Shown: positions 3,662 to 61,729 of the stretch, one piece after another
Position numbering within the stretch: the stretch's first letter is position 1
Layout of the letters: the number at the start of each line of letters is the position of its first letter
NCBI RefSeq assembly: GCF_040938485.1
Contig: NW_027271369.1
Coordinates: forward strand, 1,674,001 to 1,738,000
Source of the DNA: Diadema antillarum
Taxonomy: Eukaryota
Direction of reading: 5' to 3'
DNA: 64,000 nucleotides
Made by a program: the position numbers and the translations under genes
The notes under the pieces: model-generated
Told to the model about the DNA's origin: nothing
What the model saw: the letters and a program-made list of their open reading frames with translations, nothing else
Database searches by the model: none

Positions 3662-5122
3662 CTATTGATTAAGCGAATGTTTAAGCATGTCCTCGTAGTA
3701 CGGCATCGCTTTCTCAGCGAGCTCCCGTACATCGTCTGGTACCTCCTCCCATGCCGGGACCACTGCTGGTGGAGTGAAATGGGTGCTGTACATGGCCGCA
3801 CCCAAGAAATTTTCATTCTTATAGATGTTATCACCTGCCCATTTCCACGATTTGGCTACCTCAGGCGACCCGGACCATTGTAGAAGCGACTCTGAGTAGG
3901 GGTAACCCACGGCATCACAGAACTCTCGAAGTACCGGTGCAGGGTTGGTGAGAAGAGCAGACGAATCGATGACTAACGGGGAGGGGTTGATATGATCTCG
4001 TATGTAGGTCCAGAGCTCGTGATGCTGCTGGAAGACTTTGTCGACGCCATCCTCCTTGGCATAGGGACGGAAATCGAAGGAACTTTCATCAGTTTCGTTG
4101 AACTTCAGCATGCCAACTTCTTGGTACTGAGCGAAGGTCGCCTTCTTCATAGACTTGTACACGAGCAGAGGATGTCGGATGATGAAGGCGTGTTGGTATC
4201 CTTTTGGAATAAATTGTCGTCTCTGATCGTTTGGTATGGCTATGCTTTCATCTTTGACGAAAACATATTTACTGGCTGATTCTTCCAGTTTTTTCTTGAT
4301 TGTTGCAAACCTTTACCACATAGAAAGATACAAATAGAAGACAAATGTCTACAACAACTCAGTTACTTATAGGCCCTATGTCAATGCCCTTTGTATTGCT
4401 TAGTAACAATACAACATTGTCTGTGTCATGTTTATAGGAAATAATTGTTTATTTCCTTTTAGCTGTACACACCGAAACTGTCCTTGATGCAAATTAATCT
4501 AAATTTGTTTAACTCTGATACATGTACTTGCGTTATCTTCTCACATTACTCTTTGTCGCAAAGAGAGAGAGAGAGAGGGGGGGGGGGGGGGGGGGAGAGA
4601 CTTCAATGGGACTCGATAGGGGGTAACGACTGTAACACCAGGTGGAAGAGAGTATCACCATGGTAACCACAATTTCTCTCTTCCACCACCAGCGACCACC
4701 CTGGAAACACTTGGGCCTACATAATGAAATATGACACGCAAATGAATTGATTTTATAGCTCAAACCATATAACTCATTGCCCAAACTAATGAAATAAGAG
4801 AATCATTCATCATCGCTTGACAAACTTACGGCAATCTGTCTGGAAAGAAGATGGTATCTTTCATGTATTTCTCGAGTGCCTCGGCAGCTAACTTGAACTC
4901 CTTCTCGTGACCAGCATAGCTCATTGGTTGCTCTGTAATCCCAATCTTCTCTAGTTCCTGCAAGGCAAAGTGGCAGAAGCCGAACGGTTCCATCCACACC
5001 TCGCAGTCTGGAATCCCCGACATACATTTCGTGAATGCCGTCGAGATCGATCTGGGTATCATCCACAGAATCGCCCGACCTCCACTTTGTCCGCAAGGGT
5101 TGTTATTCGGTACATCAGACAT
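3662..5122 (-). CDS. Sulfotransferase-fold protein (Sulfotransfer_5 / BCAT-like N-terminal domain family), array copy 1; join(5122..4830, 4310..3662), 313 aa
   Basis: ATG at 5122 (MSDVPNNNP). GTAAGT donor after 4830, AAG|G acceptor at 4310, 519-nt phase-2 intron. 293+649=942 nt open. Motifs WMIPRSISTAF (5'-PSB-like), WMEPF, FVKDE, IRHPLLVYKS (3'-PB R-x7-S), PLVIDSSALLTNP, FCDAVGYPYSESLLQW, STHF. Confidence 0.88.
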
Positions 5123-5235
5123 TGTGAGGTATATGGGAAACGAAGTTATGAAACGGATTTTCACTTTGTAGTGTTGCCCCCATCCAAGTGAGACTGTCTT
5201 GTGATCGCGTCTCTTCACCGAAGTGTTTGCAGAGA

Positions 5236-5247
5236 GGCCTTTGAACA
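5236..5247 (-). promoter_or_regulatory. DR1/HNF4-like nuclear-receptor element upstream of copy 1, position-conserved in all 7 copies
   Basis: Minus-strand TG(T/A/G)TCA-A-AGGCC(A/G/T) at 5236, 14038, 21073, 28240, 41966, 53177 and 61842, which is 111-117 nt upstream of each ATG. Flanking DNA diverges between copy groups. Confidence 0.5.
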
Positions 5248-59520: not shown

Positions 59521-59901
59521 TACTTTTTGTTTAGTGTTTAGTTGCACCTGTTCAGAAATCAGTAATCTAGTGTATTAGTATTAATGAGTCATCGCAAGAC
59601 TACCAAAAAAAAAAAAAGAAAAGAAAAGAAAAATGAATCATCTGCAGGACATCTAATACCAAATCTGCATTCGTAGTCACACCTCATAAGGTTCTTGACT
59701 GATTTGTTAATGCAATCTGATAATATCTATCCTGGCAGGATTATTTTGCACATGAAATTCTTGCCTACATTTGAAAATGTTAATAGGCCTATAGAAGTGC
59801 TCATATTTACAACTTTTTCATAATCATGTACTAATCGTATGTATTTGTAAATTTTCGTAACATGTTTGCTAAATGAAGAATAGTAAACACATTTTTACTG
59901 A

Positions 59902-61729
59902 CTACTCAATAGGTCGATGTTGAAGCATGTCTTCGTAGTACGGCATCGCTTTCTCAGCGAGCTCCCGCACATCGTCTGTTACTTTATCCCAGGCCGGGAC
60001 CGCTGCTGGTGGAGTGAAATGGGTGCTGTTTATGGACACGCCCAAGAAGGCTTCATTCTTATACATGTTATCAGCTGGCCACTTCCACGACTTGGCTACC
60101 TCAGGCGACCCGGACCATTGTAGGAGCGACTCTGAGTAGGGGAAATCCACGGCTTCACAGAACTCTTGAAGTACGGGTGCAGGGTTGGTGAGAAGAGCAG
60201 ATGAATCGATGACTAACGGTGACGGGTTGACATGATCTCGTATGTAGGTCCATAGCTCGTGATGCTGCTGGAAGAAGGCATCAGCGCTATACTCCTTGGC
60301 GTAGAGGCGGAAATCGAAGGAACTTTCATCGGTTTCGTTGAACTTCAGAATGCCAGCTTCTAGGAACTGTGCGAAGAACCCCTTTCTGATAGACTTGTAC
60401 ACGAGCAGAGGATGTCGGATGATGAAGGCGTGTTGGTATCCTTTTGGGATGAATTGTCTTCTCTGATCGGTGGACATGGCATAGCTTTCATCCTTAACGA
60501 AAACATATTTACTGGTTGATTCCTCCAACTCTTTCTTGATAGATGCAAACCTTCATTATGGAGAAATATATATAAAAAAATGACCCCATTAATCATTTTA
60601 CATAACATCGTTACTGTTAATAGTGTTTTTCTCTTTAGATTGTGAATTCTTCGTTTTTCCCCTGTCGCATGGTAGGTATCGTCGATTTTTCTTAAAACTT
60701 CATGTAGGCCTACATAGGCTCCCATGTGACCTCACATCATACCTACTCCTTTAGAAACACAAATTGGCAACTGTGGTATAGTTGATGAAGCTGTTGACGT
60801 TCATATGTGTTCGAGTTCTGCAAACATGACTTGCATGTTTCTGTGATATATCAATGTGACTAAAATAGACATGGCGAGGGAACATGCAAGTTATGCTAAA
60901 TCGAGGGGAAGGTGCATTCCAATGCCTTTTGTTGAACATATCAGTACTTTAGCAACGATTGACAAATGAGGTCACAACGGGAATATTGGTTTGGAAGCAT
61001 TTTTTGTGTGTGTGTGCGAGAGACGATCCAACTAATATGAAGAAAGATTAGTTAAAATCCATGGAATGCTTCTAAATATCCGTTGCACCGTAAAAGTGAT
61101 GTTGAGGGTATCATAAATCAACACAAATCAACATGCATTTGCATTTCAGAGAACATTAATTCAATGAAAGTTACTGATTTATGCTATCATTTTCAAATTA
61201 CCTCCAAAAAATTGTACACTATCCCGCTTTTGCTCATATCAATGTCAGTGTTATCTGATGTATATTTTTGGACTATTAAGGATTGAGAGTAGGAAATGTT
61301 TATTTTCAATACCTTATATAATTACATAAATATGAACTGATCTAAAAGCCCAAATTCAACCATTTGTGATTACTGAAAATTCCTCGTTGACACGCCTTGG
61401 TGAACAGGAGTCGAATGTGACCCTTGGTAAACTTACGGTAGTCTCTCTGGAAAGAAAGTGCTTCCGGGTGCTAAGTTCTCTAGCTCCTGGGCAGTTATCT
61501 TGAACTCCTTCTCGTGGCCATCATAGCTCATGGGACAGTCTGCGATCCCATGCTTCTCTGTTAGCTTCATTCCGAAGTGGCTGATACCAAACGGTTCAAT
61601 CCACACCTCGCATCCTGGAATCCCCGACATGCATTTTGCAAAAGCCGTGGAAATCGATCTTGGTATCATCCACAGAATCGCCCGACCTCCATCTTTTCTG
61701 TGAGGGTTGTCATTCGGTACATGAGACAT
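59902..61729 (-). CDS. Sulfotransferase-fold protein, array copy 7; join(61729..61437, 60550..59902), 313 aa
   Basis: Same exon sizes, 886-nt intron homologous to the copy 6 intron, motifs intact. Confidence 0.9.

What the first reader, a model, noticed from the sequence alone, without database searches (positions are those of the whole stretch)
3662..61729. Seven-gene tandem array of an uncharacterised cytosolic sulfotransferase-fold family: candidate diversified small-molecule sulfation (natural-product or detox) cluster
Seen in sequence: seven co-oriented minus-strand genes with identical architecture (293+649 nt, 313 aa, no indels), six intact, no signal peptide or transmembrane anchor. 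Established knowledge: PRSxST (5'-PSB) and R-x7-S (3'-PB) motifs define PAPS-dependent sulfotransferases. The LW..PRS.STA / F.IR.P / P.VID...L..P...L..FC...G.P....LL.W / ST.F pattern matches the Sulfotransfer_5 family, normally fused to a class-IV aminotransferase in plant 'BCAT-like' proteins. To my knowledge this family has no defined substrate in animals. Echinoderms make many sulfated metabolites (sulfated steroid and triterpene glycosides, steroid sulfates). Inference: this is a recently amplified, substrate-diversifying enzyme battery for sulfating secondary metabolites or dietary xenobiotics. Automatic annotation would probably mislabel it as an aminotransferase, although no PLP domain is present.
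Basis: partly seen in the sequence, partly recalled or inferred. Interest (0 to 1): 0.8.

Follow-up and report, generated by a model that had tools for sequence, protein, structure and literature searches.

The report
Sea-urchin tandem array of sulfotransferase genes
The window holds seven of sixteen tandem copies of a soluble sulfate-transferring enzyme gene from the long-spined sea urchin Diadema antillarum; the copies belong to a very large, little-studied family whose active site looks intact, but what they sulfate is still unknown.

Summary
Seven minus-strand two-exon genes (293 + 649 nt, GT..AG, 313 aa, no indels) lie at the stated coordinates. Six are intact. Copy 4 has one TAA nonsense codon that is absent from the other haplotype and from D. 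setosum.

The proteins score above Pfam's cut-off for Sulfotransfer_5 (PF19798). The AlphaFold2 model (pLDDT 94.5) matches only sulfotransferases at the top of the fold searches. The closest are the polyketide-synthase ST domains OLS and CurM, then the tyrosylprotein sulfotransferases (TPST). Donor-site and candidate catalytic residues (PRSxST, Glu45, Lys117, Arg143-x7-Ser151, Ser273) are invariant in all copies.

- The array has 16 copies; it runs about 90 kb past the window.
- It is not recent. Paralog dS is 0.17-0.41 against 0.04-0.08 for orthologs, and the array is syntenic in D. setosum with 1:1 orthologs.
- It is one of many arrays: at least 130 exon-2 loci in the unpurged diploid assembly.

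RefSeq calls these genes "uncharacterized protein". A Lytechinus relative is indeed named BCAT-like.

Substrate and expression remain untested, and "substrate-diversifying" is only consistent with where the variation lies. The scan has already noted sister arrays of this family elsewhere in this genome. I rate it a new member of a known kind, of moderate interest.

The parts
3662..4310 (-). c1 exon 2 (649 nt, includes stop)
   Evidence: spliced product identical to RefSeq XP_071498356.1 = P0013
4830..5122 (-). c1 exon 1 (293 nt, ATG to GTAAGT donor)
12238..12886 (-). c2 exon 2
   Evidence: product identical to P0214
13629..13921 (-). c2 exon 1
19277..19925 (-). c3 exon 2
   Evidence: product identical to P0206
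20665..20957 (-). c3 exon 1
   Evidence: weak Pfam PF19798 match to profile positions 3-44
26524..27172 (-). c4 exon 2, with a haplotype-specific nonsense codon
   Evidence: TAA at 27055-27057 (codon 137); CAA in the C404 haplotype and in D. setosum
27836..28128 (-). c4 exon 1
40215..40863 (-). c5 exon 2
   Evidence: product identical to P0213
41563..41855 (-). c5 exon 1
51262..51910 (-). c6 exon 2
52773..53065 (-). c6 exon 1
59902..60550 (-). c7 exon 2
   Evidence: PF19798, 27.4 bits against a cut-off of 23.2; a short contig from run X1 lies at 59940-60077
61437..61729 (-). c7 exon 1
   Evidence: a short contig from run X1 lies at 61464-61632

Best explanation
These are functional genes for soluble, cytosolic, PAPS-dependent O-sulfotransferases of the Sulfotransfer_5 family (shown: family, fold and intact motifs; inferred: activity). 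The donor PAPS would be held by the 5'-phosphosulfate loop P23-R24-S25-x-S27-T28 and by the 3'-phosphate motif R143-x7-S151. Glu45 would act as general base on the acceptor hydroxyl, with R24, K117 and probably S273 stabilising the transition state. That is the TPST / CurM-ST type of active site, not the His-base type of classical cytosolic SULTs. The seven genes are the first seven of a 16-gene tandem array. The array is older than the D. antillarum / D. setosum split and belongs to a family of at least 65 loci per haploid genome. The family evolves by birth and death under moderate purifying selection. Variation sits mostly in the helical segments 46-98 and 145-205 rather than in the donor-binding core. 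My inference is that the paralogs share the donor chemistry and differ in small-molecule acceptor (phenols, sterols or other lipophilic alcohols, of dietary or endogenous origin). On that view they work as a conjugation battery like other expanded 'chemical defensome' families. Substrate and tissue are unknown.
For: - Family: PF19798 scores 36-46 bits on full-length family proteins (cut-off 23.2); exon 2 alone scores 27-29 bits.
- Sequence link to solved enzymes: a family profile finds CurM ST (E 5e-12) and OLS ST (E 8e-9) in the PDB. PRSxST aligns to PRSGST, Glu45 to the Glu of PPELH, K117 to the Lys of 'DK', and RHP to RHPY.
- Fold: the AF2 model has pLDDT 94.5 and pTM 0.92. Foldseek's top hits and the top 22 VIA hits are all sulfotransferases: 4gox Z 14.5, TPSTs Z 13-14, and P-loop kinases only at Z 9.2 or below.
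- Residues: family-invariant positions are preserved in every array copy. The R-to-E spacing of 21 equals that of TPST1 R79/E100 (PMC5562738).
- Selection: paralog dN/dS is 0.28-0.42 and ortholog dN/dS 0.2-0.3.
- Conservation: 1:1 orthologs and synteny in D. setosum.
- Location of variation: invariant fraction is 0.72 in residues 14-45 and 0.60 in 206-253, against 0.28 in 46-98 and 0.43 in 145-205.
- Family size: at least 130 exon-2 loci at E below 1e-62.
- Gene models: four of seven are identical to RefSeq models.
- Transcription hint: two contigs from one possibly-RNA run lie on exons only.
Against: - No biochemical datum exists for any Sulfotransfer_5 member in the literature I could search.
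- Expression is not shown. Only two short contigs (138 and 169 aligned nt) from a run whose RNA nature is a guess; they could come from paralogs or from DNA.
- No 25-codon window has dN/dS above 0.63, so diversifying selection is not demonstrated.
- I had no model coordinates. That the variable segments line the acceptor pocket is therefore an inference from secondary-structure position, not a measurement.
- The nearest solved relatives act on acyl-carrier-protein-bound intermediates and on peptides, not on free small molecules.
Confidence: 0.55

Rival explanations
1. Dedicated biosynthetic enzymes for the urchin's own sulfated metabolites (for example sterol sulfates, or modified naphthoquinone pigments) rather than a broad detoxification battery.
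For: Cholesterol sulfate has been isolated from Diadema savignyi (PMC8145587). Diadema makes modified echinochrome pigments (PMC9086473). Each paralog is kept by purifying selection and has a 1:1 ortholog across species, which fits fixed roles.
Against: At least 65 loci per haploid genome far exceeds the number of sulfated metabolites the two reviews I read report from Diadema: one, a cholesterol sulfate. No biosynthetic partner gene is nearby: the flanks hold a 2-hydroxyacid-dehydrogenase-like gene and a LINE. A segregating null allele suggests individual copies are dispensable.
Confidence: 0.2
2. Activating sulfotransferases: sulfate is installed as a leaving group for elimination, dehydration or cyclisation, as in CurM/OLS ST, possibly connected with the animal polyketide synthases of sea urchins.
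For: The closest solved relatives by sequence profile and by fold are the PKS-embedded ST domains CurM and OLS. Sea urchins have their own PKS genes (PMC9086473).
Against: These are stand-alone proteins not linked to any PKS, thioesterase or carrier-protein gene within the 10 kb read on either side of the array. TPSTs match almost as well (Z 13-14 against 14.5), so the resemblance is to a structural class, not to a reaction. A family this large is unexpected for a single pathway step.
Confidence: 0.07
3. Cytosolic peptide or protein (tyrosine) sulfotransferases, because the catalytic residue pattern is TPST-like.
For: PRS-x-ST loop, Glu 21 residues after the Arg, Lys about 26 residues before R-x7-S, as in TPST1 R79/E100/K159. 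TPSTs are among the best fold matches.
Against: There is no signal anchor, so the proteins are not in the secretory pathway where known tyrosine sulfation occurs. Pfam Sulfotransfer_3 is matched only below threshold, and only in one relative (E 0.12). Identity to TPSTs is 12-15%.
Confidence: 0.06
4. A largely silent or decaying gene array: open reading frames kept by gene conversion, not by function.
For: Expression is unproven. c4 carries a nonsense allele. In the rest of the array c10 is a pseudogene, c9 and c11 have stops four codons early, and c14 lacks an AG acceptor. dS is much lower in the 3' half, which could reflect gene conversion.
Against: dN/dS is 0.2-0.4 in both paralog and ortholog comparisons. 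Every family-invariant residue is kept in all 16 copies. Orthologs are intact in a second species.
Confidence: 0.07

Closest known systems
CurM ST and OLS ST (PDB 4GBM, 4GOX), the sulfotransferase domains of cyanobacterial polyketide synthases
   Same: Detectable by sequence profile (E 5e-12 and 8e-9). Best fold match (Z 14.5, 230 residues aligned). Shared PRS(G/x)ST loop, Glu after strand beta-2, Lys of the 'DK' strand, and RHP(Y) 3'-PB motif.
   Different: Those are domains inside megasynthases acting on carrier-protein-bound beta-hydroxyacyl chains. These are stand-alone 313-aa animal proteins in multigene arrays, with 12-17% identity.
Tyrosylprotein sulfotransferases TPST1/2 (PDB 5WRI, 3AP3; tick TPST 8W5Z)
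   Same: Fold match at Z 13-14. The Arg/Glu/Lys/Ser catalytic pattern has near-identical spacing.
   Different: TPSTs are Golgi type II membrane proteins of Pfam Sulfotransfer_3 acting on protein tyrosines. These proteins have no anchor and fall in Pfam Sulfotransfer_5.
Plant BCAT-like proteins BCAL1/2 (Sulfotransfer_5 fused to Aminotran_4)
   Same: Same Pfam family. An Atlas structural match has TM 0.68 over 240 residues.
   Different: The plant proteins are about 535 aa with a class-IV aminotransferase domain. The urchin proteins have the ST domain only.
Classical cytosolic SULTs (Pfam PF00685, for example SULT1/2)
   Same: Soluble, PAPS-dependent fold. Often in tandemly expanded detoxification families; a coral example is in PMC12314368.
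   Different: There is no PF00685 hit. The candidate base is a Glu rather than the conserved His. Fold matches are weaker (Z about 10-11).

Membership tests
Pfam PF19798 Sulfotransfer_5 | Whole-protein score above the gathering cut-off (23.2 bits) | tested here: met
   36-46 bits for full-length family proteins; 27-29 bits for exon 2 alone of c1, c3 and c7
PAPS-dependent sulfotransferase superfamily | Alpha/beta fold with a strand-loop-helix 5'-PSB and a strand-helix 3'-PB | tested here: met
   AF2 pLDDT 94.5; top 22 VIA hits and the top Foldseek hits are all sulfotransferases
PAPS-dependent sulfotransferase superfamily | 5'-PSB loop (PRSxST here) and 3'-PB R-x7-S conserved | tested here: met
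   R24, S27, T28, R143 and S151 are at least 90% conserved over 84 family proteins and invariant in all array copies
PAPS-dependent sulfotransferase superfamily | Binds PAPS and transfers sulfate to an acceptor | not testable with these tools
   Needs purified protein
TPST / CurM-type (Glu-base) sulfotransferases | Catalytic Glu after strand beta-2, aligned with the Glu of CurM ST / TPST E99-E100 | tested here: met
   Profile alignment places the family's Glu45 on the Glu of CurM 'PPELH'. The R-to-E spacing of 21 matches TPST1 R79/E100. The catalytic role itself is inferred.
Tyrosylprotein sulfotransferase (TPST) | Type II membrane anchor / Golgi lumen; Pfam Sulfotransfer_3 | tested here: not met
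   No hydrophobic N-terminus. PF13469 appears only at E 0.12 in one relative.
Classical cytosolic SULT (PF00685) | PF00685 match | tested here: not met
   No PF00685 hit at E up to 1
Plant BCAT-like protein (BCAL1/2) | C-terminal class-IV aminotransferase domain (PF01063) | tested here: not met
   The protein ends at 313 aa and has no PF01063 hit

The most novel reading that the evidence does not exclude
Sulfotransfer_5 enzymes are a major, so far unrecognised cytosolic conjugation system of echinoderms (and perhaps cnidarians). They would use a TPST/CurM-like Glu-base active site. In Diadema the system has expanded to dozens of paralogs with distinct acceptor specificities, which would shape the urchin's handling of algal chemical defences or its own sulfated metabolome.
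Probability: 0.15. Interest if true: 0.7.

Novelty: new member of a known kind. Interest (0 to 1): 0.42.

Why it matters
Sulfotransfer_5 is a widespread Pfam family (2,519 cluster representatives at 50% identity score E 0.001 or better). I could find no biochemically characterised member. An animal genome carrying dozens of intact, selectively maintained copies is a good place to find out what the family does. Diadema antillarum is also an ecologically important reef grazer, to my knowledge, so its chemical-handling repertoire is of practical interest. The structural result, a soluble animal enzyme with a TPST/CurM-like rather than SULT-like active site, gives concrete residues to mutate.

Tried and rejected
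- Single-sequence search of PDB sequences gave only noise; the profile search was needed.
- NCBIfam gave no hit. Rfam gave no hit in the window.
- The bacterial promoter/terminator scan upstream of c7 was at shuffle level and is not meaningful for a eukaryote.
- Exact-protein look-ups for the genome's own proteins returned nothing, because own-genome records are withheld. D. setosum orthologs were used for synteny instead.
- Run search: only one small run of uncertain RNA nature held the stretch. Laying it gave two short exon-only contigs and no splice joint, so expression stays unproven.
I used pairwise Nei-Gojobori windows and column diversity instead.
- Literature searches for PF19798/Sulfotransfer_5, for the LOC identifiers of urchin relatives, and for Diadema plus sulfotransferase found no functional study.
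- The coral sulfotransferase expansion in PMC12314368 concerns PF00685, a different family.
- I considered horizontal transfer because the family is patchy among animals. I did not pursue it: the intron position is shared by nearly all loci, and the family occurs in fungi, cnidarians and plants.
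Full report
**1. What is in the sequence**

ORF listing and manual splicing show seven genes on the minus strand.
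- Each has exon 1 of 293 nt, from ATG to a GTAAGT donor.
- Each has a phase-2 intron of 519-886 nt ending in AG.
- Each has exon 2 of 649 nt including the stop.
- All encode 313 aa and align without a gap. Identity is 74-90% aa and 83-93% nt.

Copy 4 has a single in-frame TAA at codon 137 (window 27055-27057, minus strand). My models for c1, c2, c3 and c5 are identical to RefSeq proteins of Diadema antillarum. The genome is therefore D. antillarum.

**2. The array is larger and older than described**

A six-frame search of the window's own assembly places the window at C481:1,674,001-1,738,000. It finds 16 exon-2 matches in one minus-strand row, from 1.677 to 1.826 Mb. I fetched the other nine copies.
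- c8, c12, c13, c15 and c16 look intact.
- c9 and c11 end four codons early.
- c14 has a shortened exon 1 and no AG at the expected acceptor.
- c10 is a pseudogene, with an in-frame stop and no AG acceptor.

A second contig, C404, carries a parallel 16-copy row. Its counterpart of c4 is 97.0% identical over 3.5 kb, intron and flanks included, and it reads CAA where c4 reads TAA. C404 is therefore most likely the other haplotype of an unpurged 1.75-Gb assembly. On that reading the c4 nonsense codon is a haplotype-specific allele.

In D. setosum the orthologs of c12 and c4 lie about 99 kb apart on chromosome OZ188190.1. In D. antillarum they are 95 kb apart. A maximum-likelihood tree pairs c4, c11 and c12 each with one D. 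setosum protein, with strong support and very short branches.

Nei-Gojobori estimates:

| Comparison | dS | dN/dS |
|---|---|---|
| Window paralogs | 0.17-0.41 | 0.28-0.42 |
| D. antillarum vs D. setosum orthologs | 0.04-0.08 | 0.2-0.3 |

The duplications long predate the species split, and the copies have been kept by purifying selection since. "Recently amplified" is not supported.

**3. Family size**

A profile search of the genome gives 130 scored exon-2-type matches, all at E below 1e-62, out of 498 first-look candidates. They sit on many contigs, mostly in tandem groups, and mostly in pairs with identical scores that probably represent the two haplotypes. I therefore estimate at least 65 loci per haploid genome, as a lower bound. 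Nearly all matches start at the same profile position, so the intron position is shared. Two loci are intronless. The scan's notes list several other arrays of this family in the same genome, which agrees.

**4. What the protein is**

- Pfam: PF19798 scores 36-46 bits on full-length family proteins against a cut-off of 23.2. Exon 2 alone passes, and exon 1 matches the 5' end of the profile weakly. No PF00685 or PF01063 hit appears.
- PDB by sequence: a profile of 84 family proteins finds the CurM and OLS sulfotransferase domains (E 5e-12 and 8e-9). The family's PRSxST aligns on PRSGST, Glu45 on the Glu of PPELH, Lys117 on the Lys of the 'DK' strand, and RHP on RHPY.
- Structure: AlphaFold2 on c1 (P0013) with that alignment gives pLDDT 94.5 and pTM 0.92. 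Foldseek and VIA-align rank only sulfotransferases at the top: 4GOX Z 14.5, TPSTs Z 13-14, then heparan-sulfate, mycobacterial and cytosolic enzymes at Z 10-12. P-loop kinases begin at Z 9.2.
- Residues: W20, R24, S27, T28, E45, K117, H138, R143, S151, D213, W243, W253, S273, F276 and Y303 are at least 90% conserved across the family and are present in every array copy.

The spacing R24-E45 (21 residues), K117-R143 (26) and R143-x7-S151 resembles the TPST catalytic set; TPST1 has R79, E100, K159 and S286 (PMC5562738). The equivalence of S273 with TPST S285/S286 is my inference.

The N-terminus has no hydrophobic anchor, so the protein should be cytosolic. I conclude it is a bona fide member of Sulfotransfer_5 and of the PAPS-dependent sulfotransferase fold. 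Its active site is of the Glu-base (TPST/CurM) type, not the classical SULT type.

**5. How it probably works and what it may be for**

- Shown: family, fold, intact motifs, purifying selection, and conservation of the array.
- Inferred: PAPS is the donor, Glu45 is the base, and the acceptors are small molecules.

Variation among the 16 copies is concentrated in the disordered N-tail, in residues 46-98 (invariant fraction 0.28) and in residues 145-205 (0.43). The PSB-to-Glu45 segment and residues 206-253 are far more conserved (0.72 and 0.60). dN is highest over residues 49-97. Position 156 alternates between Trp, Phe, Ser and Thr.

This pattern is what a conserved donor site with a diverging acceptor site would look like. 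However, I could not measure distances on the model, and no 25-codon window reaches dN/dS of 1.

The evolutionary features are those of environmental-response gene families:
- many tandem arrays;
- a segregating null allele;
- spacing that differs between haplotypes;
- neighbour order that differs between species (the c4 ortholog of D. setosum is followed directly by the c1 ortholog).

I therefore favour a conjugation battery for lipophilic alcohols and phenols of dietary or endogenous origin. Dedicated biosynthesis, leaving-group chemistry and peptide sulfation remain as rivals.

Nothing in the flanks points to a pathway. The low-coordinate side of the window holds fragments of a 2-hydroxyacid-dehydrogenase-like gene, and a LINE reverse transcriptase lies beyond the array's far end.

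**6. Expression**

Only one public run held any of the c7 stretch, a small 'echinoderm metagenome' library whose RNA nature is a guess. Its two contigs (138 and 169 nt aligned) fall inside exon 2 and exon 1 and nowhere else in 5.5 kb. That is suggestive only: no splice joint was seen, and a paralog origin is possible. Expression remains unproven.

**7. Comparison with what is known, and novelty**

The papers I could search mention PF19798 only in lists or as the N-terminal domain of plant BCAT-like proteins. None reports a substrate. No paper mentions the LOC identifiers of six S. purpuratus and Lytechinus relatives that I searched.

RefSeq names the Diadema genes 'uncharacterized protein'. 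One Lytechinus variegatus relative is named 'branched-chain-amino-acid aminotransferase-like protein 1', and the Atlas's automatic cluster names follow the same pattern.

The genes are thus annotated but functionally unknown. The family assignment is straightforward once Pfam is run. What is new is the scale of the expansion and the TPST/CurM-like active site in a soluble animal protein. I file it as a new member of a known kind, of moderate interest, and note that the scan has already reported sister arrays in this genome.

Noticed in passing
G000:C481:1738001-1826600 (loci L001-L009): The array continues beyond the window with nine more copies. c10 is a pseudogene, c9 and c11 have stops four codons early, and c14 has exon 1 shortened by 9 nt and no AG acceptor.
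   Followed up: yes
window 27055-27057 (minus strand) and L010: The nonsense codon of c4 (TAA) is CAA on contig C404, the probable other haplotype (97% identical over 3.5 kb), and CAA in D. setosum. It looks like a segregating null allele.
   Followed up: yes
window, all seven CDS: Synonymous divergence is very uneven along the gene: dS is 0.4-0.98 over codons 25-145 but 0.1-0.25 over codons 205-313. This suggests gene conversion or extra constraint in the 3' half of exon 2.
   Followed up: partly
L013:10001-18627 (D. setosum OZ188190.1): In D. setosum the c4 ortholog is followed directly by the c1 ortholog. In D. antillarum c3 and c2 lie between them, so array content or order has changed since the species split.
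   Followed up: partly
G000:C584:82208-83041 and G000:C16:1906472-1907305: Two family loci match the whole profile in a single open frame, so they are intronless. They may be retrocopies or a separate subfamily.
   Followed up: no
window 30799-31456 and 44120-44557: Tandem repeats of 165 bp x 4 and 218 bp x 2 lie in the long intergenic gaps between c4-c5 and c5-c6. An N run lies at 1947-2084.
   Followed up: no
L011:600-2900 (C481:1664600-1666900), minus strand: ORF fragments that, by eye only (no search was run), resemble a D-isomer-specific 2-hydroxyacid dehydrogenase (glyoxylate/hydroxypyruvate reductase-like) lie just before the window, flanking c1.
   Followed up: no
L012:14-1849: A 611-aa open frame that, by eye only (no search was run), looks like a non-LTR retrotransposon reverse transcriptase lies just past the far end of the array.
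   Followed up: no
Atlas cluster (row 2): Green algae carry a Rhodanese-Sulfotransfer_5 fusion of about 606 aa. This is another hint that the family sits in sulfur metabolism.
   Followed up: no
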